From contig NW_018408909.1 in assembly GCF_002113885.1 (NCBI RefSeq), positions 477,770-541,769 on the forward strand: DNA of 64,000 nt, read 5' to 3'. Both the position numbers and the translations under genes were made by a program. The notes beneath the pieces were generated by a model, which made no database searches, was not told the origin of the DNA, and saw only the letters and a list, made by a program, of their open reading frames with translations. This DNA comes from Mizuhopecten yessoensis. Its lineage: Eukaryota. Below, in pieces: positions 14,501 to 31,146 of this stretch; the first letter of the stretch is position 1, and each line of letters begins with the position of its first letter.

Positions 14501-15642
14501 AAAAAGAAAGTTGAGATTGAGATTGTTGATCAATCTCATTACAACACACTTTGTTATGTCTTAAATTATTGAAACTGTATGAAAACATTGATTCCAACAT
14601 CAGATAAATCAAATGTTAATGATTATAACTGTAACTTGATTTAGGCTTCAACATTTTCTTTTAAACAAATGATACATACATGTAATTTTGACATTTTGAA
14701 AAAAAACTGAATCCTCACAACTGATTATACCTGAATCGGATGAAGTACTGCTGGAGTCACTACTTTCTGAAGTAGAGCTGTCACGCTTATGTCTTCGCTT
14801 ATTACTGACTGAAACAGAACAAATACACTTGATTAGTGACATTAAAAGTTGGATTGATTACAAATCTTATACATGTATCATACCTGTAGATTGTATAGGA
14901 GGTAAGTATAGATCCAATGTCTCATACCTGTCTATACAAAGTGACTACCCATTCTATTATTGTCATAATGATTAAGGTAAAGTTAGATTCCGCCTATCCA
15001 AGTCTGTGAAGTGCGACTTCTGGCATAGGTGGTATAGCATGTTGATTGTACTAACTCTGAAGGACAGTTATCTCTCCAGATCCACCATGGTATACCCTTA
15101 ATAATTTGTAAATATAGAATGATTAAAATTATTGTTATTTTATATAGAAATAAGTAAGTCTACTTAAGTCACATTGATGGTATTTTAAATGTATTGATTT
15201 TTATCATTGTACTTTTAGCATACAGTAACCAGAGTATCCTCTGGCCCTGAGTCACCAGACCTGGACATTTTGACAGAGGCTGCATATCTCACTATCTGGC
15301 AAATTGTCATAGTCTGGTGTAAGGGCCAGAGGAAAATCGGGCTTAATGCACACATGAACATAAGAATAAGTTACTACTGTGTTTAATATTAGAATCTGAT
15401 GAACCTCTAATGCCACCACACCACCCCCATCCGCCCCACACACCTCTAAAATAATGGTGTAATAATTATAAGGTAACACATTCCTGGGTCCCTGCATTGT
15501 CACTACAAGTTTGCAAACATCTTAAGAAAACAAACAAATATGTGTTGTACAAATTTAGGATATGACAAAATTCCTTCAAATTGAATATTTAAAAAATTGT
15601 TTATTTTTTGTCTTTATATAACTTACCTTTGTCACCTGCCAT
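5567..15642 (-). CDS. Ser/Arg/Lys-rich low-complexity protein (178 aa) with an ordered C-terminal motif; 9 coding exons
   Basis: Exons 15642-15627, 14808-14731, 14223-14158, 13137-13081, 11527-11465, 11138-11095, 10804-10742, 6249-6151 and 5617-5567 all have GT-AG boundaries and compatible phases (537 nt total). Translation: MAGDKVSNKRRHKRDSS...GPVQLSKFIKRSHSKEEENRSAISGKRIKMKVKKSKRDKAMAKNRAQKLDFLNAVL*. Confidence 0.85.
5696..5790. mobile_element. Short MITE with ~21-bp imperfect TIRs and a TTAA-type end
   Basis: TTTACTCATTAACCCCTGAAA ... TTTCGGGGGTGAATGAGTTAA are inverted repeats. Confidence 0.55.
7215..7998. repeat. ~25-27-bp minisatellite (TGTTGTCTGCCCCACTGGTGAACTA), intronic
   Basis: Unit repeats roughly 30 times and gives rise to the spurious ORF 7316..7819. 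Confidence 0.95.
7999..8315. repeat. 48-bp tandem repeat (~6 copies) abutting the previous minisatellite
   Basis: ACATCTTCAAGAGTACCCTCCTGAACATCTTTCATTGAAGCCTCCTT-type unit; translates on the minus strand as (MKDVQEGTLEDAKEAS)n. Confidence 0.9.
9933..10288 (+). mobile_element. tRNA-derived SINE (CORE-like central domain, L2/CR1-type 3' tail), near full length
   Basis: A-box (TAGTCTACTGG) and B-box (GGTTCGAGTC), then TCTTTGAGCAAGATACTT...CAGCTGTAAATGAGTA, then the tail GTGAACCGCTTTGAG...AAAGCTGTATATAAG and (ATT)n. Confidence 0.8.
15226..15345. mobile_element. Palindromic MITE, copy 1
   Basis: Arms CCTCTGGCCCTGA...CACCAGAC / GTCTGGTGTAAGGGCCAGAGG; same family as 24766 and 28063. Confidence 0.8.
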
Positions 15643-17862
15643 GTTGACAGCTTTGAAAATCAGGAATCACATCGAGGTCAGCAGATTACAAGCGTTTTGT
15701 ACCATTCTACACTACAGTACTGGCATCAGATGCGGTGAGAATGTAGTGCACCTGTAGACAGAAACTATGGTTAAAGTCGTATAAAATAATAAGTACAGTA
15801 ACATTTTGAAGACGGTCCACGTCGTGGTACCAGTAGGCCTACACTACAGTATAGTTTGTGGTTTACCTATAATTTGACCTACATGTACTTTCAATTTCTA
15901 TGATAATTTCACAGTACTTGTCAGTAGTTTGACATCCGACTCGGCGGCTGCATCATTCCCAAATTCCTCATATATACTTTGGCATTCACGTAGTTTGAGG
16001 ACCTGTCAAAAGAAACGCAAAATACTGTCTATAATATCCCCAATGTTGACTGAAATCTTGGTAGACTTACCACTTCGTCTAAACACAAGGGGCGTAACTC
16101 CTACAAAATGTAAGAAAATGGTATCACAACACTATTTCATCACCGTTTATCCAGGGGTCGACACTAACACTAGTCAGCTAATCATAGACTAGTAGATTTC
16201 AGCAAGGACTAGTGAAACACCTAACCTAACTGGTACATGTACTTTGGACTTTTGAAAAATATTATCATAAAATAAGAATATTCCCTTTTCAAAATTTAGA
16301 AAACTGCTTAAAATAAGATATATTTCCTGATAGTTGTCATTTTTTTTTAAACTTCACCATATTTTTATGGCAGTAGTTATTTTAAGTCCCCTACAGTTGA
16401 TTACTTTTGATCTTTCGTGCTGTAGATCGCGATGTTTCCTTAAGGAAATATTGGACCAGTTAGATAATCTAATTCCGTGCATTGACAAAGGACTAGTAAA
16501 TAATCTATTCAACTAGTCATGTAGAGTACCAAGCAAAATAAGTTAGTGTCTAACCCTGGTTTCGGGGTAAAATTGTACTTTTCCCTCAACAATGGAAACG
16601 TTTCTGGATGTGGCTCCAACTGTTTTCATACCTTCAAACTTTGGATTTTTTTTCCCCCGGGCCAAAAAGTGAAAAGACTAAATAAACAGTTAACAAGAGT
16701 ACCGCAGGGGAGGAATAACATACAGTAGGCCTGTTCCGACCCTTACCAAACTCATATGTATTGCTTTCTTGTATTGAAGTGTATGAAAATATTTAAACGG
16801 GACAAGAAGAAACTACATGGATAACTTTCTAACGTTGATTTTATTCTGTGATAGGTATACGTCCGTCAAATATGTTCACGGGGCTATGATCAGAGGAGCG
16901 TCCGTCCGTTTCACTGTCCTCAGACTACCTTAGTTTTGCAAGGATAGTCCAACGATTTTGCAGTCGGTCTTCTATAGATAAAAAATAATGCTTTGTTAAG
17001 CTAAATTCTTGATTTCTTTCTTTTGTTAGTTACTTAAGTAATTGACTCCAGTTGTTTTTCTCAGACCGTTATATATGTATGTCCGGTGGGGGTTATATAC
17101 TTATGTAACGTTAAATTATATTGGTAGGGAAAGTCAATGTCTTCTTCCTTTCGGTGTCTTCGCTAATTATAGGTTAGTCCTCTACAACACACCGTTTTGT
17201 GTGGTCTGACTGTGTACGGTTTCTTCATAAAACTCTTAAATATCCTTACATTAAAAAAAATCAGTTTTTGAAATCAAGATGAGACGAGAACAGAATTTTT
17301 GAGTATACTCGATTTCTGTTAGTTATAACAACCTGATATGTTGGGGAAAATAGACAAAAAAACATACCATTTAAACAAGCAAGTTTAATGTTTAATGTCA
17401 TTTGTTAGTTCAACATTTTATACATATATATATACAAAAATGTGCATATTTTTACAACGTAAATTTAGCAGCAAATTATGTGCAATGTACATTCCAAATT
17501 TAATCGATAAACACGTGTGTCTATTGCCTCTTTCCAGTCTTTATTTCTTGTGTTTATAGCAGCTCATTTGCTCGCTAATAATCATACATACTTTGATAAA
17601 CATGAAAACTACTTTTTAAAGCTAATGTCGCATCCCGTACACCATTTACATTATATTTTGATGCTATATTTTAATCTGTACAACATCTCACTAGATTTTA
17701 TCTCTAATAAACTATTCTACATACATTTACTGACGAATTAAAGTATAAGAAAGAAAGCATATCATCTATTCTTTCTATCCTTCTTTCCTCCGTAAAATTC
17801 TGCAGTACACTGCAGTGTAACAGAGAAATATTGTAAGTATATATTTGTCCTTTTTACCACAA

Positions 17863-19173
17863 TTATAATCTGATATCAGAACGAGTCCTGTTCTGGCGGA
17901 AGTAGTCTGTGATTGTCCTTTGGTTTGTCATCACCCCCTTGTGGTGTGCCTCGATATCGTCGTGTACCTCCCACACCGTGTCAAGGTGTTCCCCCAGATC
18001 GGGATGCTGTTCCAGATAACGGATACACAACAGAGCACCATGCTTCGCTTCTGAAGCTGTAATGATGCGCTTTGTTGATATAGGCAGGATTGTACGATGA
18101 GGACGTCTCTGATGACTTGAGCATTCTGAATTGTCTTTTTCCTTTGGAACGTATTGTCGCCTTGATGTACCGTGCGCCTCGTTTTCGCACTCTAATTGCA
18201 GCAAAGGAGAATGGGTAACACTGGTTTGAACGGAATTGCCACTTTCGTCAGCCTCGTTTACGTCATAGTAGTCGTTGCTGTTTTCGTTGTCGGAGACATA
18301 TTCCTCCTTAATTATCATTTCAGTGGGTACAGCGGAAGGGGATATGGCTTGTGATTGAGAACTGTCACTAACGCTTTCTTTTTGCCCATATATGTTCATA
18401 TAGGGAGGATAAAATTGGGATTGATCCATGATTCCAGACTCGTTTACATTGGAATCATAAACGTTAGTAAACATGTTCTGTGTACCATGAAGCATTGTTT
18501 CAGAATCAGAACCAGAATAATCGGGGAACTTTCTATTAAATGCCACTCCAGGGTTGCGATCGTTATATGAGTAGCAGTCCTCTAAAATCTGGAACCGTCC
18601 TGTGGTGCCCCTGCTTTTAATCCCATGGCGTTTCTTGAATTTGAATAACCAACCGTTAGAATACGAAAACGACTGATCAATATGTAATTCCTCTCCGAGG
18701 ATTTTGGCATGTTCGATGATCATTTGATCCGATAAAGTAATCGATGTGTCGATTTTCCTTTGAGCCGATATCCACTTAAAAAGTTCCATTTCCAATTTGT
18801 TGTGTCGTCCACCCCTACTTCTCCTCATCTCTTCCTGGTCAGGTGTGATACTCAACCATTTATCCTTCTGGCGAAGTATCTCCCCTAGGGTTGTCCTTCC
18901 AGCCGGCAAATTCCATTTGTCTTTACAAAACTGGACAAGATTTTCCTGTGTTGCTTTCGGGTTAAATTGTTTATACAGACAAATCTCCCTTTTGTGTCTA
19001 GCTGTAAGGCCAACACGGGTTCGTTTGATTTTCTCTGTTGACAATCCAGACGTATAGTGCATGGTTGCGTCGTTGCGCTGATAACAGTGAACCTCGTCCG
19101 CCATTGTCCTTATATCGGAATGTGACCTAGTTTGTTCTTCGGTTGAATACGGCTCTTCCTCAAGACTTTCCAT
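17863..19173 (-). CDS. Domesticated pogo/Tigger-derived CENP-B-like DNA-binding protein A (HTH-psq + HTH-CENPB, no DDE), intronless, 436 aa
   Basis: Uninterrupted ORF with first ATG at 19173 (the track start at 19194 is TTG). Contains KRTRVGLTARHKREIC, LEMELFKW and FSYSNGWLFKFKKRHG, which are CENP-B/TIGD HTH motifs. C-terminus has EAKHGALLCIRYLE and QRTITDYF. Confidence 0.9.
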   Translation of the reverse strand: MESLEEEPYSTEEQTRSHSDIRTMADEVHCYQRNDATMHYTSGLSTEKIKRTRVGLTARHKREICLYKQFNPKATQENLVQFCKDKWNLPAGRTTLGEILRQKDKWLSITPDQEEMRRSRGGRHNKLEMELFKWISAQRKIDTSITLSDQMIIEHAKILGEELHIDQSFSYSNGWLFKFKKRHGIKSRGTTGRFQILEDCYSYNDRNPGVAFNRKFPDYSGSDSETMLHGTQNMFTNVYDSNVNESGIMDQSQFYPPYMNIYGQKESVSDSSQSQAISPSAVPTEMIIKEEYVSDNENSNDYYDVNEADESGNSVQTSVTHSPLLQLECENEAHGTSRRQYVPKEKDNSECSSHQRRPHRTILPISTKRIITASEAKHGALLCIRYLEQHPDLGEHLDTVWEVHDDIEAHHKGVMTNQRTITDYFRQNRTRSDIRL

Positions 19174-20074
19174 ACCGCTCAAACAAACACGCAACTCGAA
19201 ATTCAGTTACACTGACACAATGAATTACTGTAACCCACGAATTAAGTTACGTTCACAACATGCATATGAGCAGCTCCACCATGACTCCGGGCAGTTTACA
19301 GCGTATGCTGATATAGCGCATGCGTATATATACATGTGTGGGAATTAAATGGCAGAGTACGTAAGCGTGCACATATACAGCGTGTGTGTATACGGAGTTG
19401 TGTCGAGGACACTGTTGTGAACCGACTGCCGTCCGTTTAAACTAATGTATACAATGTGAACTTCTGAGTTAATCTGGTAAAAGCTTATTTCATCTCATTC
19501 ATTGGCCGATTGGGACGTCATTTCAAATATCATTGTATTTGACTACATATCATCCCTATATGCCTACTTATAAAAAACATATCATAGTAAGGATCAGAGG
19601 CTTGTGCTTTACTACAGTTTCCCGTTCATTTGTGAAAAACGTTTAAATAAATTCAATGTATCTGCTTGGAAAGTTGTCATTGGGTATAATCTACCCACCC
19701 ACTGTCCTTGGTGGTGTAAACGTGCGTATACATAGCCTTTGTCGTCTGCTCGTAATGTTACAGTGAGAGCTATTTGTTGTCGTGGAGCTATAAATAGACC
19801 CCGGTTACTATAATCCGACGTTCCGATAATGCTGCAAAACGCATGCGCTAATGGATCATAAACCGGAAGAGAAACACAAGTGTACGAACTGATGTGTACA
19901 AATTCAGACAATGTCCCAGACATCTGATAGGTTATCGGATCTGCATATTTAACGTGAGTAATGGTATACATTGAAGTTATAAAGTATGTATTCATTGGAC
20001 TTATTTGACACGTTGAAAGCATGCATGACGAGTTAAAATTGGGAGTTTGAAGGTGAATTTGTGCTACCGGTCAA
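19174..20074. promoter_or_regulatory. Putative bidirectional promoter between the two CENP-B-like genes
   Basis: ~0.9 kb head-to-head spacer, locally CpG-richer. NRF-1-like GCGCATGCGT (~19316) and ACGCATGCGC (~19839), ETS/GABP-like ACCGGAAG (~19862), and a YY1-like AATATGGCGG overlapping the second ATG of gene B. Confidence 0.6.
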
Positions 20075-21637
20075 ATGAATATGGCGGAAGAAGAGAAAAG
20101 GAGTTTTTCAGACACTAATATTGCTTCATTCACGGCTTTGTCAGACCACACGAGTGAATCACCGAGCTCAGACAACGATGACAAGGTTCCGTCGCCAGCA
20201 GAGGATACTGAGAACACGACAGAATCGTTAATATCAGTCACTGGTGATAACGACACAACATCTACAGCGATCACTGACAATACCGACACAACATCCACAA
20301 CGATCACTGACAAAAACGACACAAAATCCACAGCTGTAACAGCTGATCGTAACCTTCGTAAGAAATTGGCCAAAGCCATGCATAAGGTCAACAACGAAGT
20401 ACGGTTGGGGACTTTACCATCACTGAACGCTGGGGCTACAAAACCAGCAAAACGTAATAGGGTGGAGATCACGGCCAAACATAAACGTGAAATATGTGTC
20501 TACAAACAGTATCATCCTAAAATTACGTACGACGAGTTGGCAAAACATTGCTTAGGTAAATGGAACTTGAAAATCGGACGTTCAACTTTGAGTGATATTA
20601 TTCGACAGAAAGAGAAGTGGCTGAATATCACTCCAGACCAAGAGGACTTGCTGAGAAGCAGAGGCGGACGCCATCGAAAGCTAGAGACTGAGCTTGTGAA
20701 ATGGCTTGCAAATTTACGAAAATGTCATCCTAAACTAGTTTTCACTGACAAGTTTATTCTGGACAACGCAAGACAAATAGGATCGATTTTAAATATTGAC
20801 CAGTCGTTTTCGTATTCCAAAGGCTGGTTAATAAAATTTAAGAAGCGACAAGGACTAAACACCAAGGATGGTAAAGAAATCGCCCGCAGACTGTCCTTGA
20901 TGGAGTTTGACACAGGAAGTAGTATGGACCTCAGTTTATTGGAGGGGAATGAGGCGTTTACACGTGGCAGTCAATACAACGTTGCTGATTCTGGAGCCGA
21001 TCAATCAGTTGTTGACGAATCGTTTCCTACTGTTACACATTCCTGGTCATTCTTAGGCGATTATCGAAACACTAAAGTAGCACAAACTTCCGAAATGTCA
21101 GATTCGAACCCGAACTCTCCACCCCCTGACAGTATGGTCATCAAACAGGAAGTGTGTAGTAACGATGGGGATTATGGGGAATGTAACGACACTGCATGTT
21201 CAGGAAACATGAACGTTGATCAGGAAGGTCAAGGTCAGAATCAATGGGAATCGGACTCGGATATTCCTAATTCGCTTTGTGTCGATCCTGACGGACATGA
21301 CACGGAGATGAACAGCTCATTCCCCGTCCCAGTGTTGTCCTTCCGTACACGGCAAGGTAGTGCACATCCAGGGACATCATGTGAAAGGTCATTTGAGGGT
21401 CAATGTCTTGAGACTCATGAGCAGAAAGAAACGTCATTTCCTGGTAATACGTCAAACTATGTGTCTGTACAAGAGGCGAAGCATTGTGCCATTCGATGCA
21501 TTCGATTTTTTGAAAACCATTCTGATTCGGGAGAACACCTTGATGCTTTGTGGAACGTGTTTCATACCTTGGATTCCATTCCAACACTGGAGATGTCAAG
21601 ACAGGCTACTATCAATCAATATTTCAAGAAAAAATAG
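20075..21637 (+). CDS. Domesticated pogo/Tigger-derived CENP-B-like DNA-binding protein B (HTH-psq + HTH-CENPB, no DDE), intronless, 520 aa
   Basis: Contains KRNRVEITAKHKREIC, LETELVKW and FSYSKGWLIKFKKRQG. N-terminus is Thr/Asp-rich and repetitive. C-terminus has EAKHCAIRCIRFFE and QATINQYF. Paralogue of gene A. Confidence 0.9.
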   Translation: MNMAEEEKRSFSDTNIASFTALSDHTSESPSSDNDDKVPSPAEDTENTTESLISVTGDNDTTSTAITDNTDTTSTTITDKNDTKSTAVTADRNLRKKLAKAMHKVNNEVRLGTLPSLNAGATKPAKRNRVEITAKHKREICVYKQYHPKITYDELAKHCLGKWNLKIGRSTLSDIIRQKEKWLNITPDQEDLLRSRGGRHRKLETELVKWLANLRKCHPKLVFTDKFILDNARQIGSILNIDQSFSYSKGWLIKFKKRQGLNTKDGKEIARRLSLMEFDTGSSMDLSLLEGNEAFTRGSQYNVADSGADQSVVDESFPTVTHSWSFLGDYRNTKVAQTSEMSDSNPNSPPPDSMVIKQEVCSNDGDYGECNDTACSGNMNVDQEGQGQNQWESDSDIPNSLCVDPDGHDTEMNSSFPVPVLSFRTRQGSAHPGTSCERSFEGQCLETHEQKETSFPGNTSNYVSVQEAKHCAIRCIRFFENHSDSGEHLDALWNVFHTLDSIPTLEMSRQATINQYFKKK

Positions 21638-22164
21638 TCCAAAATCCATCGATATATTATAATGTTCTGTGGGAATGTGATTTCTTGTGGAAAATGTGAT
21701 TCTGAAGACATGAGAGGAGCTGTTACAGAGATGGTAGTGTTTTTTTTATTATAAATAACGCACAAATCAGTACTTCTTCGTCCGTCGACTTATTATTTTT
21801 TTAACTGGAGTCGGTGGTCAATTCACATACTTATACAAGCATCCTGTATCTTTCTGTTCGTTTTTTATATACTTTTTAATTATTAAAAATTTGAACCAAC
21901 TTTGCTATATTTATATAAACCACTGTTGCATATCACTAAGGATAATTGTACAGCTTTGAAGACATCTCGCACTGTTCATGACTGTCTGTAAATGTTTAGC
22001 TCTAGTCCTGGATGAAATTGTTCCCTGGTGCGTCCGTCGTTCGTCTATAAACCTTTTCCTTTAAAAATTCGACTCCTGAACCACTAATCATACTTTAAAC
22101 AAATTAGATATGAAGCACCACTGGGCCAAGGGAACTTATTTTGGTATGTACTCTGTACTCTAAA

Positions 22165-22340
22165 ACACACACGCATGCATCTTGCACACAGGGACGGCCT
22201 CCCCTATAAGGAGGCTGCGATATGTTCGTATCACCCAGCAGGACACCCCACCAGGTCACATTATACTGACAACGGGCGAACCAGTCGTCCCACTTCCGCT
22301 TCACTATCGAGTAGTTCGGCTATCCAGCAGACCAATAATG
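22165..22340 (-). mobile_element. Fragment of a Meta-type SINE
   Basis: GGTCACATTATACTGACAACGGGCGAACCAGTCG resembles the MetaSINE central domain as I recall it. A matching tail-like remnant (GGTTTGGTTT...TTTAACGTCCTATTAAC) lies at ~11615-11658. Confidence 0.5.
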
Positions 22341-22599: not shown

Positions 22600-23330
22600 G
22601 TACGTACCAAGACAAATATGTAATTACGTAAGTATGGGGCTTCCATGCAGCACCGGATATAGAAAAGTTACATGTATTTTTTTGCAAATTGATTTTGAGG
22701 TTACATAGTAAGGCAGGTAATTATATGGCATATTATGAACTAGGAAGGTATCCTATGAATATAGTTCGAAAATTTCGTATTTTCAAATATTGGATAAAAT
22801 TAAGAGGTTCTGAAAACTATATTTTAAAATAATGCTACTCTGAGATACGATGTAACTAGGATATATGGTTAGTAAGGTGAGGCAAGAATTATACGTAATT
22901 GGTCTGGCTTATGTGTGGGAAGCCCCGAGTCTAAATAATGATACATATTTTTGTATATTCAAACAAGAATGTCTTGAAAAAATAACATCCTCTGCAAAAG
23001 GTGCACTTTTATCAATATATTTGTTATTTTATTTGTATAAATCTATCAATATCAATTATGTAAAACATCTTTATAAAATAAGACTATCAGCACACAGATT
23101 AAATATTGAATGTGGCAGGTAAAACAATATCGAAAGAGGAAACAGATTGTGGACATTATGTAATATGAATGAGGTAGAAATTGAATTTCGTTTCATTTTG
23201 AAATGTCCTTGTAATGCTGACATAAGAGCTAAATTCATATTTTATTAAACATATGTTTTATATATTATATTGTACTGTATATATATTGTAACTGATAAGT
23301 CGGAAGACTTAAAGTAATAACAAACTTGTA
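22600..23330 (+). mobile_element. 5'-truncated, degenerate non-LTR retrotransposon (CR1/L2-group ORF2 3' end)
   Basis: Frameshifted, stop-interrupted peptides ELGRYPM...FRIFKYWIKL, KIRLSAHRLNIECGR and R.NRL..LCNMNEVE.EF.FILKCP (C-terminal Cys motif). A 3' stem-loop TAAGTC-GGAA-GACTTA lies at 23296-23311. Confidence 0.8.
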
Positions 23331-23339
23331 ATGACATAA

Positions 23340-24180
23340 GTATATATTGATGTGACCGATTTGTAATTACATTAGTGTAATTATATTCATGAACTTTCGT
23401 TTATTACATCTGTATGATTATATGTGACCTATCTATAATTACATCTATAAAATGATACAATGATATGTGACAGATATGTAATTATATTAGAGTAATCATA
23501 AAACAGATCTGTTATTACATCTATAGTAATGTGTGTGACAGATATGAAATTACATTAGTGTAATCATATGACAGACCCGTAATTACATTAGTGTAATCTT
23601 ATGACACACCCGTACTACATTTGTGTAATCTTAAGACAGACCGTAATTACATTAGTATAATCATATGACAGACATGTATTAATTAAATTTGTGTAATCAT
23701 ATGACAGAACCGTAATTACATTAGTGTAATCATATGACAGACATGTAATTACATTCGTGTAATCATATGACAGACATGTAATTAAATTTGTGTTATCATA
23801 TGACAGACATGTAAATAAATTTGTGTAATCATATGACAGACCTGTAATTACATTTGTGTAATCATATGACAGACCTGTTATTACATTTATGTGATCTTAT
23901 GTCAGATATGAATTACATTTATGTGATCTTATGTCAGATATGAATTACATTTATGTGATCTTATGACAGATATGAATAACATTAGTGTGATCATATGAAA
24001 TTTCGGTAAATATATATCTATACTTTGGTATGTGAGGAATCTGTAATAACATTTGGTTGATCTTATGACAGACCTGTAATCACATCTATACACAATGATA
24101 TTAGTGTATTCATATACCAGATATGTAGTTTCATATATAAAAGATATGTGACAGATGTATAATTACACACGTTAGTAAGA
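23340..24180. repeat. ~33-bp minisatellite (GTAATTACATTAGTGTAATCATATGACAGAC..) with degenerate edges
   Basis: Periodic unit read directly; most homogeneous at 23540-24000. Confidence 0.9.
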
Positions 24181-24488
24181 ACGTGAAATATGTATCCTAT
24201 GTATTTGCTCTCTTCCAACAATGTATAACATTCACAACAAATATTTCATCACTGATTTATAATTGTATATGATAGTGTTCTCCTTTTCAAACAAGAAATA
24301 AAAAGGGCACTTCATTACATCTTGCTTGTGACATTGCACAAATGTATCAGTCAAGACAAAACAATCATTCCTGTAAATTCATTTGTGCTGCACATATATA
24401 GTAACACTCTAGAATATTTGAAAAATTATTCACTTTTACAAAACAACGAAATCATTATATTATTATTTCCGTTTCCGGTTATCTAGAT

Positions 24489-27400
24489 CTAGTTCCGCTT
24501 CCTCCTTGCGTATACCACATCACCAGTGTGTATGGTGTCATTATGGTCCATGGCAAGATGGATTCCCAGGCATGGTTTCGGACCATAAGGTGGCTTCAAA
24601 CGGAACCTGTGAATAGATGGGAGACACAGAACATAATTCTTTTTGAGGCGCAGCCTGATGTCATCTATCTGTTCTCCTAGGAATATTAACCATATTTGTT
24701 TTAACATCATACGACATATCATTGTGGTTTATCAAGCTTTCTCTGAACTAAATAAGACTGTGGACTAGCCCGAAATTCCTCTGGCCCTGACATCAGACTA
24801 AGACATTTTGACAGATCGATATATATATCTAACAAAATGTCCAAGTCTGGTGTCAGGGCAAGAGGAAACTCAGGCTAGAACATAGGTGAACATCATAATG
24901 TGATCTAGAACATAGGCAAACATCTTAATGTGACATTGACAACAAAAGTCTGTTTGTTTTTGTCAGTAAATATTTCAATTTTTTTTTTATACCAAATACT
25001 TTGAAAGAAACTTCACATCAGAATTAAAATTTTCATGAAGTTCAATGTCACTGACATATCAAACATTTCCGACCAGTCCAATATAATATTGAACACGATA
25101 TCGATCTGTGAAGGATTCAGAACATGAACTTCCACTTCTCCACTTACATGTCTGTGTTAAGTAATGGATTATTTCTCATACTAGTATTACTTTGACCGGA
25201 TATGAATAATCCAGCTTATGGAGATTTCAAAACTCACTACAAAAGAGGAGAAGACTCACTTTTTCAGCGTGGTCAGTGGTTCCTCATCCTTGCTCTTCTC
25301 TCCCTTAAATGGATCTACCGTCACCAAGATACACCTGTAGACAATCACGTGTTATATCGTAAATCATGTTCATACAACTGTAACTAGGATACACATGTAA
25401 ACAAACGTGTTATCTTATAGTGTTCATGTTTTACAGTGACTCTACTGGACTCATTGTGCTGTGAATATCGGTGTTGATTGGCTTGTTAACATAATGTGCT
25501 GGGTTCATTGTCCATGTTTGCGTTGTGTTGATTCTCTTTTTAACCCTGTATGACCGTAAATATGCTATGTTCATTCAAAATTAAAATTATGGTGTTCGAA
25601 CGCCGCTTAACTTACGTATTTTTTTTTTTATATAAAATTGTCAATTTTGTGTCTACAGCAAACCGCAAAATGATTGCGCTGTATATCATACCTTGTGCAT
25701 GCATCGATGTTTCTGAATGTTGCTTTACCGATCTTAACTTCGTCCCAATCATCCTGGAAGTGAAGAGCAACCCCACAGGTTATTCCATAAAATAGAACAA
25801 TGAATTGGGTCATTTACCGTTAATGTATCTAAACATAGCTTACAGTGTCATTAATGACATGGTGTCATCCGGTAGTTGTTCTTAGACTAACGTGATTGCT
25901 ACTAACAATGTATAGATCCTGTGACTTCCAATATATAGGAATCCATTGCGTGTACATTTAGATTTATTGTAAACATCAAGAAAAACACATGTACGAAACA
26001 TGTTCAAATCATATTTCAGACACGTTTTAATTAATTTCATTTAAATCTGAGTAACATAAGTATGGCATACTTTTCGAAACTCTCAAACCAATACAAAAAC
26101 TTTCCCGAAATATCCACATCGCCCGATATTTGCCCCCTGATAATATGGGGTATGAGTTACCTCATCAAAGGCTGGACATTCGTCCACCACAATGTTCGCC
26201 CGGAAGTTCAGCATGGTCACTGGCTCAGCCAATCGTTTGTTGAGCTCGTTAAGGCTTGCTGAGGTCATTAGCATATAACCACAATAGTCGGAGAACGCCA
26301 GCTATAATGAAATAGAAAAAAAAATCATAGGTGTCAACCTCTGAAACCTCCAATGAGGGAGATCTCCAACATTCCGCATTTCCAATGAGGGAGAAAGTGG
26401 TGAAACGCGACTAAAACCGCTTTGCTCAATTTATCTTTCCTTTATTATGCATCAAAATAACTCCAAAAAGCATCCATTTGATTCAGACACACCTGTTATG
26501 ATCATTACACATACCCTGCAGTAACTAGGAGATCATTTGACCAAACGATGTAGATTTTGAGTTTGTGTGAGTTTCACTTGAATGTAGGAGTTTCGAGGGC
26601 GATTGATAATTTTTGGTCAAAATGAGGGAGTCTCCCTCCTAATAAGGGAGGGTTGACAGCTATGAATTTCAGTAAATACAGTTTTTTCTAAATTAAGACG
26701 TCTTAACATTATGAAACACCCTATCTGAATAAGTACTATATTTTTCTTTTTTTCCTGACAAAATATCTCAATTTGTTTTAACAAAGCTATCCCACATTGC
26801 TTTAAAGATATAACTACCGAAAACGGTCATAACTATGTACAGAGTTAAAACTGTATGAGACACGGAATGGAAATCTGGAATAATGATCTATCATGTTCCT
26901 CTCTTACTCTCCGACAGAATTTGTAAATAACGTAAATGGGCCATTCGACATGTCACTCTGAAACTGGTAGGTTGGGACCAATCTCTCCCCGGCTTCCTTG
27001 TCCTACACTTAATGTTTCTGTGGACGACAAGGAAAGCTGAGAGGTTGGGGCGGTGATTGTTATAACCTGTGTTTTGGCTACTATCTGACCTAGCGCGTGC
27101 CCTAGAATGGATACGATATTACCGTGTCGCCCTTTTTGGCGTTGTGTTTCCATAGTTTTGTGACATTAGACGCGTCACGCTTGTCCATTTCTGGGGACGA
27201 GAAGTGAACACGTAGTCCAGTCTTGCCAAGAAACTTGTCCATCCAGCTGGCCGCCTCATCACCGAGGTCCAAAGAAGTTGACCACTCCTCCTTTATTCTG
27301 TAGTAAATCATATAACAATACTATATTATTATTCGATGATTTCCACATTTATACGTAAAAAAAATAATTGTACAGCATTGGTTGTCTGAATATTTCATGA

Positions 27401-29679
27401 TTATTGTGTCAAAGTCAAAGTATTTATACATTTAAGCTGTATTCTGAACAAAGAGCAAACATAAATTCGTACTTAATTTTCGAGACCCATGTCTTTGGTC
27501 CCTGCTTGGGGTGGATAGGGATAATGAGGGAGGACATCCCTGGGGCGTCCAGGAGCATAGTATCTCCCTGTAGACTGGTGGAAATGAGCGCCATCTTAGG
27601 GATCTGGCGCTGCGTGACGTAAACTCCCGTGCTCGCCGCCACAGCCCAGTGTCTGAAACGAGAAAACGTTATCGTACAATACTGTGGCGATTAATGAAGC
27701 GATTCAGTGCATTTCATCGTTAATCTTAAATAACTTTGATACACGTGGTTTATTATTAACTTGATACAAGCCTGGTCATTCCTGTATGTACAGTACAGGT
27801 GATGATCTATCATTCCCGTACAGTACACGTACGTGATATATATTATAACCCGATAGAAGTTTGATTACTCCCGTTAATAAGTTCACGTGATCTATCAATA
27901 ACGACCCGATATAAGTTTGATCAATCGAGCGTTGTACACGTATCAATATATCTTCCCGCGCAGTACACGTGATACAGTATTTGCTATTTCACACTGTATC
28001 CGTTATGACGTCATCCTTTGCGCGATGATTTTGTCGATCTTTAAACTCCCGTTAAATGATGGTAGCTCGAGTCTCCTCTGGCCCTGACACCAGACTTAAG
28101 ACGACTATCTGTCAAAATGTCGACGCATGGTGTCAGAGACAGAGGAAACTCTGGTTAAATCAAACGGAGGATATGTAAAAAGAGGTCAAGAATTTTGATA
28201 TATTCTTGTGTAATTCTCTGGTTAAACCTTCCAACGTCAGGATTACTGAAGTTACAATTGATAATCACGTGTTGGGCAGTTTTTTTTCTCTCATAAACCA
28301 AAAACAAGGGAAATAAAGGTAATGTGACGTCATGTCGTGCGCATCCACTTGCAAGCGCTCTCTGCGCCCCTGAATTATGTCAGAACAATTAAAGGCTCAG
28401 ATAGCTCAATGGTAGAGCGTCTGTCTAGAGTTCGGAGGGTCTCGGGTTCGAACCCTTTGTCTGGACTAAACTTTCTACTTTATGATGTTTGTATCATCCA
28501 TTTCCATTTTTTATTTGCACAAATTTCGCAATTTATGGCATACACAATTTCGTTGAATCACAGGAAAGTTAACAAATTGACGGTTGGATTGTACTTACCC
28601 ATAACATCAGTTTCCCGTGATCTATATATACCTTCCTGTGATATTAGAGTATATTTGAATTGCAACATATCTTATAATATATAGGTCCTAGTTATACACT
28701 GTACTTAAACATCTGCTATCAGAAAATTGTAAAATATTTCACACCTTATCAAAACTCCAACAGAAAGAATGGAATAGACATACAGCGGTGTCTGTTCACA
28801 GTATAAGTCGGCGCTATTAACTGGAAATATTAGTCCTAAAAGTCTGAAATTCTGCCATCTAACACTGTTAGGTGCAATATCTAGTTTATTGTCTCCATTG
28901 TATAGTGTTTAGATGATCTTGAAATCTGTGATGTCATTTATTTTTGTTTTATGGTGTTGCAATAGGTCATATATATATAACACACAGGGACCAGATAATT
29001 TGTTACAGCTATATTTGGACCTAAACTTTGGTGTTCAGAGTAATTTTACATGTTTAGGGGTTTAGGTCGACTTTCGGTAAAAACGACACTCCCAATGATC
29101 ATCCTCTGTATGATCATATATAGGCTATAGCTGTAAATCATTCCGTAAATCATTCTCAGGCCATTTTGGTCTCTGTTGAGTATAACATATAGATAGAACA
29201 CGACTTCGTGCTCAGGTCGCATGTACATGTATATCATGAGAGAATTTACTGATTGGCATTGTCAACATGCATTTGATAAATATATTATAGGGCGTAAAGG
29301 AAGATATAAATATCATTACATACTTCAATAACCGTCCATCTTCTAACGAAATTCATGTTGATAATACTTTAAAAAGAGTGCATCTTTTTAACAAAGAGTG
29401 ATAATGCCTTAATAACTCTGTATCTTCTAACATAAGTTCAATGACTCACCTGTCTGTGACACCTTGAAATGTTAAGCCAGTGGGTGTGCAATCAGCCGAG
29501 TCGACTCGAAGCCCCCCGAGCGATTTGGTCGGGAACACGTACAGCTCCGAAATAGTTCCGACCTTCTCGAATGGCCTGGTTCGATACTTGTTGGACATCC
29601 AAACTAAACATGTGTATTTAAAGACAGCGACACCTGCCAGTGTCGCGGCTAGAGCCACCGCATTTGGACGATCCGACAT
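24489..29679 (-). CDS. MTARC: Mitochondrial amidoxime-reducing component (mARC; MOSC_N + MOSC domains), 326 aa, 7 exons
   Basis: Exons 29679-29450, 27652-27473, 27297-27123, 26301-26161, 25753-25692, 25334-25260 and 24606-24489 are GT-AG and in phase. Motifs: N-terminal TM anchor, LYVFPTKS, DRHW, TQRQIPKMALI, DLGDEAASW, FSD, NFRANIVV, FDEDDW, the Mo-ligating CTRC, EPLTTLK and GDVV. Confidence 0.95.
24766..24877. mobile_element. Palindromic MITE, copy 2 (TA-flanked, mARC intron 6)
   Basis: TAGCCCGAAATTCCTCTGGCCCTGACATCAGAC...GTCTGGTGTCAGGGCAAGAGGAAACTCAGGCTA. Confidence 0.85.
26326..26664. mobile_element. Non-autonomous TIR DNA transposon (~340 bp) in mARC intron 3
   Basis: TIRs CATAGGTGTCAACC / GGTTGACAGCTATG with repeated subterminal AATGAGGGAG motifs; no clear TSD. 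Confidence 0.7.
28063..28157. mobile_element. Palindromic MITE, copy 3 (TA-flanked, mARC intron 1)
   Basis: TAGCTCGAGTCTCCTCTGGCCCTGACACCAGAC...TGGTGTCAGAGACAGAGGAAACTCTGGTTA. Confidence 0.8.
28393..28467 (+). pseudogene. tRNA-like sequence (tRNA pseudogene or SINE head)
   Basis: A-box TAGCTCAATGGTAGAGC and B-box GGTTCGAACCC. Acceptor and anticodon stems pair poorly, so it is not called as a functional tRNA. Confidence 0.6.
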
Positions 29680-31146
29680 TACGAAAGGCCTAGTTTAAGT
29701 TATAATATGCAAAACTCTCCTCGGATACGTGTAAACACACTGATTTATAGCGTTCTGATAATGTAGTAAGCAGGCGGTGTTGCATGAACAATTGTAACAC
29801 CGTTCAAAGTTCCGGGGAAACATACGGTCTTTTTAAGCGCTAAGTTAAAACACGGAATTAGATTGCTAAGAAACTGACGTCACGTCGTGCGATGTTATTT
29901 TTTTAATGAATAAACCACTGTCTAGGAATAACATAGCCGAATTCCAGTGAATCAGTAAAACAGGTCAAAATATTAGGTCCAGCTGGCTATCTTAAAAACA
30001 TCTGAGTATTTGATTGTGATAATGCGTCCCCTTGACCTATAGGCCTACCATGTTAATATCACTGATATTCTCTATGGACCTCACGGTGTAATCAAAGAAG
30101 AAGAAATCATTTAAAATTCTGAAAATATAAAAACCTCCATACTAATATATTACGGTGTATAACATGAAAGTATCATTTTAGATGTTGATAAATGTTAAAA
30201 GTAGCAAACGATATACTGCTTTGTCTAAAGATATAGCATCAAACACGGTCAAGTGGTGCAAAGGTGAAGGTCCTTTTAATTGTTCGTATAAAGAATGACA
30301 TGTTCCGACGGCACCTGCTTGTGTTAACATCCATGATTCAGTATAGATGTTTTGGTATGCAACTTCAGTTGCATTTTGTTGGTATCTTTAATATGCATTT
30401 GTCAAGCTCCATGGCAGCCCTTCATTCAACTTCACAGTGTTGTGTTCAGATTGCTTTGGATTGTTTTGGAAATGTCAGTATTATCCTTGCACAGTATTGG
30501 GGTTATAATATTTGTTACAGAGACACATGCGACGTATTATATATCTCTGTTGATGCACGGGCTCTAATCTAATTCCGTGATTGATGTAAATATTCTAAAA
30601 TAAAATACCGTATTCCTTAATTCACAGCTGAAGGGTGTACATTTCTGTCATGAGACCTTCTACATGACAGATCTTATCTTTTAAAAGTTATTAATAGTTA
30701 TTTCATTATATTAAACTTGATGAATATTCTGAACATAATTGTAATTAATTGAAAGGGTCTTTTTAAACTGATGTTATTTTTTGGTTACACCGATATGTGT
30801 ATAATATTGCACGGTACGTCGATGATTATAATGGAAGCATAACGATGCACTTATAGGTGTATAAGTTCTACTATTTCTATGAATAATTTCTTGTATTTTC
30901 TTAGATGATGTATGATGTTACATTTCTAACTTCAAAATGATACATTCTCATGCTTAAGGAATTTTTACAAAAGTCTTGATCATCAATATCATTATACAAT
31001 GAATCAAAATTGGTTTGGCTAATTACCTCCCTTGTTTCAGTACTCTTTCTACTCGGAGGTTGAAAACGATTGACAACAAGTTTGTTTCAAAATGGCGTAG
31101 AGAACCTGTCGATGAACTGTCAATAGCAGGAATCAAATCACCAGTC

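What the first reader, a model, noticed from the sequence alone, without database searches (positions are those of the whole stretch)
17863..21637. Head-to-head pair of DDE-less, domesticated pogo/CENP-B paralogues: candidate co-regulated heterodimeric chromatin system
Seen: two intact, intronless ORFs (436 and 520 aa) transcribed divergently, ATGs ~0.9 kb apart, with no flanking TIRs visible to me. Their bipartite HTH regions align without gaps at 79/135 identical residues (~59%, hand count). The linkers are unalignable, and neither has a recognisable DDE/RNase H domain between the HTH and the C-terminal helix. Known: CENP-B, JRK, the TIGD proteins and fission yeast Abp1/Cbh1/Cbh2 are independent pogo domestications that bind centromeric satellites or silence transposons, and most keep the DDE-like domain. 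Inference: DDE loss preceded an old inverted duplication, and purifying selection has acted on selected modules since. That points to a lineage-specific two-component DNA-binding factor, possibly recognising satellites or MITE TIRs.
Basis: partly seen in the sequence, partly recalled or inferred. Interest (0 to 1): 0.85.

Follow-up and report, generated by a model that had tools for sequence, protein, structure and literature searches.

The report
Scallop pair of tamed transposase genes
Scallops keep two working genes derived from a jumping-gene enzyme: both lost the DNA-cutting part but kept the DNA-binding, pairing and replication-clamp-docking parts, a real but known kind of gene recycling (as in fly CAG) whose targets in scallops are unknown.

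Summary
Observation confirmed: two intact ORFs, A (436 aa, minus) and B (520 aa, plus), 79/135 identical in the CENP-B-type DNA-binding region, with no DDE domain by Pfam, a custom profile or AlphaFold, and no TIRs. Domestication is well supported: single copy each, transcribed unspliced, dN/dS 0.14-0.19 (0.03 in the HTH), and orthologues beside mARC in two other scallops. A's PIP has the CRL4-Cdt2 degron signature in two species. The co-regulated two-component idea is weakened. In Argopecten the genes are swapped into a convergent order, each carrying its own conserved NRF1-type promoter block, and A:B RNA depth varies from about 1:1 to 16:1. Best reading: non-catalytic, dimerising, PCNA-docking DNA-binding regulators, convergent with Drosophila CAG. 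Targets, heterodimerisation and any centromere role are untested. An oyster dead-DDE gene may share their origin (support 79/87, unproven). New member of a known kind; no paper on it found; B is missing from two other scallop annotations.

The parts
17863..19173 (-). Gene A ORF, 436 aa (a public record has the 413-aa form starting at Met24)
   Evidence: transcribed unspliced; dN/dS 0.14-0.15
18616..19026 (-). A bipartite CENP-B/Abp1-type HTH DNA-binding region (aa 50-186)
   Evidence: Pfam HTH_Tnp_Tc5 E 2.6e-13; Abp1 1iuf E 1.9e-9; top fold match CENP-B 1hlv; dN/dS 0.03
18301..18312 (-). A psi-KxE SUMO-acceptor-like motif (aa 288-291) with an acidic tail, in the disordered linker
   Evidence: the only such motif in the protein, present in all orthologues; function inferred
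17923..18057 (-). A C-terminal two-helix hairpin (aa 373-417), inherited from the pogo transposase C-terminus; putative dimerisation module
   Evidence: AlphaFold pLDDT 94-97 in the core; a profile from transposase C-termini hits it at E 2e-5; no specific PDB match
17899..17922 (-). A PIP box QxxIxxYF (aa 418-425) with TD at positions 5-6 and Arg at +4: PIP-degron signature
   Evidence: signature from PMC3973308; degron form in the window and Ylistrum only
19283..19340 (-). Conserved promoter block of A with an NRF1-type palindrome at 19316-19325; the RNA contig begins at 19292
   Evidence: conserved in three species and stays with A in Argopecten; contig end
19740..19911 (+). Conserved promoter block of B: NRF1-type palindrome 19839-19848, ETS-like CCGGAAG 19863-19869; the RNA contig begins at 19860
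   Evidence: conserved in three species and stays with B in Argopecten; the palindrome occurs twice in 64 kb against 0.01 expected, pattern chosen after seeing it
20075..21637 (+). Gene B ORF, 520 aa; its orthologues are not called in the Ylistrum and Argopecten annotations
   Evidence: transcribed; dN/dS 0.15-0.19
20238..20336 (+). Three 33-nt tandem repeats in B's variable N-terminal extension
   Evidence: family D9
20450..20860 (+). B bipartite HTH region (aa 126-262)
   Evidence: Pfam HTH_Tnp_Tc5 E 2.1e-5; 92-96% identical to orthologues, dN/dS 0.03
21140..21151 (+). B psi-KxE SUMO-acceptor-like motif (aa 356-359)
21467..21601 (+). B C-terminal helical hairpin (about aa 465-509), 45% identical to A's
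21602..21625 (+). B canonical PIP box QxxIxxYF (aa 510-517), no TD, so no degron signature

Best explanation
A and B are host genes of scallops that descend from one pogo/Tigger-type transposase gene. That gene lost its DDE nuclease domain, was duplicated in inverted orientation before the crown scallop lineages split, and both copies have been kept under purifying selection (shown). The proteins most likely act as non-catalytic, sequence-specific chromatin or transcription regulators like Drosophila CAG. The two HTHs bind a CENP-B-box-sized DNA site (inferred from homology). The C-terminal hairpin makes dimers that can hold two sites, as homodimers and possibly A-B heterodimers (inferred). 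The acidic disordered linker with its conserved psi-KxE site is a SUMO-regulated docking region for cofactors (inferred). The terminal PIP box docks the protein on PCNA, tying its action to replication or repair (inferred from the motif and the pogo/CAG precedent). The paralogues are separately controlled, partly specialised genes with their own housekeeping-type promoters. A, but not B, may be cleared in S phase by CRL4-Cdt2 in some lineages.
For: Single copy each. No TIRs. Unspliced transcripts with silent flanks and a nearly silent intergenic stretch. dN/dS 0.14-0.19 overall, 0.03 in the HTH, 0.03-0.17 in the C-terminus, 0.25-0.35 in the linker. All 13 listed allelic differences in the HTH, linker and C-terminus are synonymous; the 8 non-synonymous ones all lie in the N-terminal extensions. 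Microsynteny with mARC in Ylistrum and Argopecten. A+B clade 100/97 with reciprocal A and B clades. Fold and sequence matches to CENP-B and Abp1 DNA-binding domains. PIP box and psi-KxE in all seven distinct orthologue sequences. CAG lacks DDE by internal deletion, self-dimerises and binds PCNA (PMC4231638). Each promoter block travels with its own gene in Argopecten.
Against: No binding, interaction or localisation data exist. The PIP box and hairpin are ancestral pogo features found in many transposases, so keeping them need not mean a new role. The hairpin has no specific structural match, and the CENP-B dimerisation domain was not among the listed matches. The degron signature is missing in the Argopecten A and in the most divergent A. 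Short motifs such as psi-KxE arise by chance, though its conservation in both paralogues argues against that here.
Confidence: 0.55

Rival explanations
1. Obligate A-B heterodimer expressed in step from a shared bidirectional promoter, binding asymmetric composite sites.
For: Transcript starts are about 570 bp apart. The head-to-head layout is shared by the window and Ylistrum and is ancestral by parsimony if the window is a Chlamydinae scallop (PMC11354973). The hairpins are 45% identical. Both genes are kept in all three genomes examined.
Against: Argopecten has them convergent, with separate promoters about 7 kb apart and both genes intact. A:B read depth is about 5, 16 and 11 to 1 in three raw runs but about 1:1 in a fourth run's contigs (my averages, table 2; low counts).
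Confidence: 0.15
2. Transposon suppressors: catalytically dead DNA-binding proteins that occupy TIRs of pogo elements or MITEs (or LTRs, as fission-yeast Abp1 does), or poison active transposases by mixed dimers, silencing them behind the fork.
For: The genome holds many pogo-type DDE and HTH sequences. The architecture equals an internally deleted transposase. SUMO and PCNA links fit silencing (general knowledge).
Against: No close parental transposase in this genome (best other hits 29-34% over short HTH stretches). An HTH dN/dS of 0.03 shows no arms-race signature.
Confidence: 0.15
3. CENP-B-like centromere or satellite binding proteins.
For: Same DNA-binding fold as CENP-B and Abp1; dimer hairpin and acidic region resemble the CENP-B layout; repeated recruitment of pogo proteins to centromeres is published (PMC4231638).
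Against: 92-96% (B) and 79-92% (A) HTH identity across scallops with dS near or above 1 implies a stable target, whereas satellites usually turn over quickly (general knowledge). No satellite test was possible.
Confidence: 0.13
4. Selfish or decaying non-autonomous pogo copies with no host function.
For: Internally deleted pogo copies are common (PMC4231638); low expression of B in three runs.
Against: Single copy, no TIRs, syntenic, dN/dS far below 1, conserved promoters.
Confidence: 0.02

Closest known systems
Drosophila CAG (CG12346)
   Same: pogo-derived host gene with a composite CENP-B-type DNA-binding domain, DDE lost by internal deletion, no TIRs, dN/dS 0.08, conserved synteny, self-dimerises, binds PCNA (PMC4231638)
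   Different: CAG is described as one gene, shorter than the transposase, and has no recognisable PIP motif in sequence; here there are two adjacent paralogues of 436 and 520 aa with a long acidic linker, a psi-KxE site and a canonical PIP box. Taken as a separate origin (inference; CAG was not in my trees).
Mammalian CENP-B and fission-yeast Abp1/Cbh1/Cbh2
   Same: bipartite HTH fold (1hlv top fold match, 1iuf E 1.9e-9), C-terminal helical module, paralogue set (yeast)
   Different: These keep the DDE-like domain; centromere or LTR binding is shown for them and untested here.
Vertebrate TIGD2-7, JRK, JRKL, CENPBD1
   Same: pogo/Tigger domestications under purifying selection; JRKL and TIGD2 come from one shared domestication (PMC7386202)
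   Different: All retain the full DDE domain (PMC7386202); A and B do not.
Drosophila Earthbound 1 and 2
   Same: pair of partly redundant proteins of the CENP-B DNA-binding domain family acting as transcription cofactors (PMC5510812)
Oyster 'TIGD4-like' gene (XP_048775618.1 and orthologues)
   Same: its best hits in this genome are A and B; similar hairpin; groups with A+B at 79/87 support
   Different: Keeps a DDE fold with the first two catalytic aspartates replaced, lacks the PIP box, and sits between an LRR gene and WWC1 in Saccostrea; no pogo-like gene was found at the 3' end of scallop WWC1.

Membership tests
Domesticated transposase gene (six criteria of Feschotte and Pritham, as listed in PMC4231638) | No transposon hallmarks (TIRs); single copy | tested here: met
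   no flanking inverted repeats; one copy each
Domesticated transposase gene | Sequence and architecture similarity to a transposase | tested here: met
   HTH about 40% identical to DDE-bearing pogo proteins; C-terminal hairpin and PIP homologous to theirs
Domesticated transposase gene | Intact ORF under purifying selection | tested here: met
   dN/dS 0.14-0.19, bootstrap upper bounds at most 0.27
Domesticated transposase gene | Orthologues at the syntenic position | tested here: met
   next to mARC in Ylistrum and Argopecten
Domesticated transposase gene | Expression | tested here: met
   RNA reads and contigs over both ORFs, flanks silent
Domesticated transposase gene | Phenotype of mutants | not testable with these tools
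   needs knockdown or knockout
Active pogo/Tigger transposon | DDE/DDD catalytic domain, TIRs, multiple copies | tested here: not met
CENP-B-like centromere proteins (CENP-B, Abp1/Cbh) | Bipartite CENP-B-type HTH | tested here: met
CENP-B-like centromere proteins (CENP-B, Abp1/Cbh) | DDE-like central domain | tested here: not met
CENP-B-like centromere proteins (CENP-B, Abp1/Cbh) | CENP-B-type dimerisation domain | tested here: inconclusive
   confident helical hairpin but only generic structural matches, best Z 6.5; no Pfam hit
CENP-B-like centromere proteins (CENP-B, Abp1/Cbh) | Binding to centromeric satellite or LTR DNA | not testable with these tools
   needs CUT&Tag or SELEX
PIP-box proteins | Q-x-x-psi-x-x-aromatic-aromatic motif | tested here: met
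   all A and B orthologues; PCNA binding itself not tested
CRL4-Cdt2 PIP-degron substrates | PIP box with TD and K/R at +4 (PMC3973308) | tested here: inconclusive
   met in A of the window and Ylistrum; not met in Argopecten A, the divergent A, or any B
Bidirectional-promoter gene pair | Divergent starts under 1 kb apart, driven by shared elements, co-expressed | tested here: inconclusive
   distance met (about 570 bp), but two separate conserved blocks that part in Argopecten and unequal RNA depth

The most novel reading that the evidence does not exclude
A and B form a scallop-specific, replication-coupled chromatin switch: a stable PCNA-docking subunit (B) and an S-phase-degraded one (A, PIP degron) pair through the transposase hairpin as homo- and heterodimers with different DNA specificities, re-marking their target sites (transposon ends, satellites or promoters) behind the fork. 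With the oyster dead-DDE, PIP-less relative they would record stepwise, complementary module loss from one ancient bivalve domestication.
Probability: 0.1. Interest if true: 0.7.

Novelty: new member of a known kind. Interest (0 to 1): 0.36.

Why it matters
It adds a well-supported mollusc case to the short list of pogo domestications that dropped the nuclease and kept only DNA binding, pairing and PCNA docking, suggesting this reduced form has arisen more than once. Conservation of the PIP box under selection, without any catalytic domain to serve, makes a concrete question testable: what domesticated pogo proteins use PCNA for. It also flags gene B as missing from two scallop annotations. 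It does not reveal a new type of system, and no target or phenotype is known.

Tried and rejected
Hidden or split DDE domain: not found by Pfam, a custom profile on proteins and six frames, or the structure model. TIRs or a composite element: the inverted matches at 15226-15343 and 24758-24885 that bracket the pair are two complete copies of a dispersed palindromic MITE-like family, not ends of one element. Orthologues outside scallops: none among 1.84 billion cluster representatives; after the A and B clusters the hits are multi-HTH proteins and transposases at about 30-44%. Orthology with the oyster gene: not shown, not rejected; no shared neighbours or promoter motif. Structural identification of the hairpin: only generic helical matches. 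Remnants of a duplication-loss event in Argopecten: one 23-nt match to B's stop region upstream of A, absent from Argopecten's own B, treated as chance. ESM Atlas gave only generic CENP-B-type HTH clusters. A paper search for scallop pogo domestication found nothing relevant. A heterodimer model could not be run, because the folding tool takes one natural chain only.
Full report
Observation. The window holds two long ORFs on opposite strands: A at 17863-19173 (minus, 436 aa) and B at 20075-21637 (plus, 520 aa). Pfam finds HTH_Tnp_Tc5 in both and no DDE_1. Because degenerate DDE domains can escape Pfam, I built a profile from 34 DDE-bearing relatives. It found nothing in A, B, their orthologues or any frame of the window, while it scored a degenerate oyster DDE at 1.8e-61. 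As a positive control, DDE_1 matches 79 places in this genome and none on this contig. The AlphaFold model of A (mean pLDDT 52, seven-sequence alignment) has ordered HTHs, a disordered stretch at 202-369 and a C-terminal hairpin, with no strand of three or more residues; its best fold match is the CENP-B DNA-binding domain, at E 2.7e-3. The region between HTH and hairpin is 168-210 aa in A and B orthologues against about 339 aa in intact transposases. No inverted repeats flank either gene or both.

Organism. The nearest relatives are from the scallops Ylistrum balloti and Argopecten irradians. The assembly size and contig count match, from my memory, Mizuhopecten yessoensis; this is not a tool result.

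Domestication. A and B are single-copy in the genome, and the intergenic DNA is unique. RNA reads from three raw runs of one study and contigs of another cover both ORFs without splice joints. The left flank is silent and the middle of the intergenic region has reads in one run only; contigs span 17400-19292 for A and 19860-22147 for B. Against orthologues dN/dS is 0.14-0.15 for A and 0.15-0.19 for B, 0.03 in the HTH, 0.03-0.17 in the C-terminal module and 0.25-0.35 in the linker; dS is near or above 1, so these are rough Nei-Gojobori values. Of the 21 listed allelic differences inside the ORFs, the 13 in the HTH, linker and C-terminus are all synonymous, and the 8 non-synonymous ones lie in the N-terminal extensions (one search left 13 weaker rows unlisted). 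Orthologues of both genes lie beside mARC in Ylistrum and Argopecten. B is not among the called genes in either, although its ORF is intact (511 and 445 aa) and a transcript-like contig exists for Argopecten B. In a tree of HTH plus hairpin, A+B form one clade (100/97) with separate A (99/98) and B (100/99) clades. So one DDE-less ancestor was duplicated before these scallops diverged. Five of the six published criteria for domestication are met; mutant phenotype could not be tested.

Arrangement and regulation. Ylistrum has the same head-to-head layout. Argopecten does not: its order is mARC, A, then B on the opposite strand, so the genes converge, with no gaps in the 21 kb fetched and weak matches suggesting the same left-hand neighbour beyond B. 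Each gene has its own conserved upstream block, and each block stays with its gene in Argopecten. Both blocks hold a palindrome close to the NRF1 consensus GCGCATGCGC (PMC10810270), at 19316-19325 and 19839-19848. It occurs only at these two places in 64 kb against 0.01 expected, though I chose the pattern after seeing it, and it is kept in all three species. B's block also has an ETS-like CCGGAAG. These look like two separate housekeeping-type promoters back to back (inference). Ylistrum and Argopecten are both placed in Pectininae and M. yessoensis in Chlamydinae (PMC11354973), so if my species guess is right the head-to-head state is ancestral and was broken in Argopecten without loss of either gene. 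One assembly cannot exclude a misassembly. Averaging the depth table by hand, A exceeds B about 5-, 16- and 11-fold in the three raw runs, while the fourth run's contigs have similar depth; counts are low and contig depth is a poor measure. Together these weaken the co-regulated two-component reading but do not exclude heterodimers.

Anatomy and likely mechanism. Four modules are conserved in all orthologues. The bipartite HTH is of the CENP-B/Abp1 type. The C-terminal two-helix hairpin folds confidently and is homologous to the C-terminus of intact pogo transposases, but has no specific solved match; dimerisation is inferred from reports that pogo transposase, CAG and the yeast proteins self-dimerise (PMC4231638). 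The terminal PIP box is canonical in every sequence. In A of the window and of Ylistrum it also has TD and a basic residue at +4, the published PIP-degron signature (PMC3973308), which is absent from B, from Argopecten A and from the ten longer database hits with a terminal PIP box that I checked. The simplest working model is a non-catalytic, dimerising, sequence-specific DNA-binding regulator that recruits cofactors through a SUMO-regulated linker and docks on PCNA. Origin, selection, synteny and expression are shown; binding, dimerisation, SUMOylation and PCNA docking are inferred. Very strong conservation of the HTH points to stable targets such as promoters more than to fast-evolving satellites or active transposon ends, but this is an argument, not a test.

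Origin. No close parental transposase survives in the genome. Among 1.84 billion cluster representatives there is no close relative outside the A and B clusters. An oyster gene annotated TIGD4-like has A and B as its best hits here, keeps a DDE fold with two catalytic aspartates replaced, and lacks the PIP box. It groups with A+B at 79/87 support, neither shown nor rejected, and its neighbourhood differs. A shared bivalve domestication with complementary losses is possible but unproven.

Comparison and novelty. Vertebrate pogo-derived genes all keep the DDE domain (PMC7386202), so A and B are not members of the TIGD, JRK or CENP-B groups by architecture. Drosophila CAG is a close functional precedent: DDE lost by internal deletion, purifying selection, self-dimerisation and PCNA binding. 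[quoted passage not shown] DDE-less proteins with the same hairpin recur among unrelated hits. I found no paper on this scallop pair. The scan's only earlier notes are on this same window (PIP box and hairpin), and I had seen and tested both features before looking. Verdict: real, domesticated, apparently undescribed, and a new member of a known kind; interest 0.36.

Limits. No eukaryotic genome collection was searchable beyond exact-protein look-ups, so sampling is three genomes plus one divergent A contig of unknown species. A heterodimer could not be modelled. 

Noticed in passing
window 15226-15343 and 24758-24885: Two copies of a roughly 110-125 bp palindromic MITE-like element; dispersed in the genome (691 first-look candidates, 40 scored, 75-86% identity). 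Gives weak sub-threshold miRNA-hairpin hits in Rfam, probably from the hairpin shape alone.
   Followed up: partly
window 22136-22322: Fragment of a very abundant transcribed repeat (tens of reads deep in raw runs, extreme contig depth); a related piece lies in the Argopecten locus. No Rfam match. Possibly a SINE-type element.
   Followed up: no
window 23319-24165: AT-rich minisatellite with a 32-33 nt unit between gene B and the 3' end of mARC.
   Followed up: no
window 24459-29697 (-): mARC (MOSC_N + MOSC) gene exons, confirmed by matches to the annotated Argopecten and Ylistrum orthologues.
   Followed up: yes
L037:7609-9144 (-) and L038:15282-16619 (-): Intact orthologues of gene B are not called in the Ylistrum and Argopecten gene sets shown by the look-up tool.
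   Followed up: yes
L048:10001-11638, L058:10001-11629: Oyster-wide conserved pogo-derived gene (74-78% identity among the four clusters found) with a catalytically dead DDE fold and no PIP box: itself a likely domestication.
   Followed up: partly
L010, L011, L014 (G000:C845, about 225-248 kb): Three Tc5-type HTH ORFs on one strand within 24 kb and with no DDE_1 match on that contig: possibly another cluster of DDE-less pogo-derived genes or exons.
   Followed up: no
L007 (G000:C4988) and L008 (G000:C76699): Long open HTH+DDE pogo-like frames (554 and 715 aa); the first ends in a PIP-like motif. Candidates for further domesticated genes or young elements.
   Followed up: no
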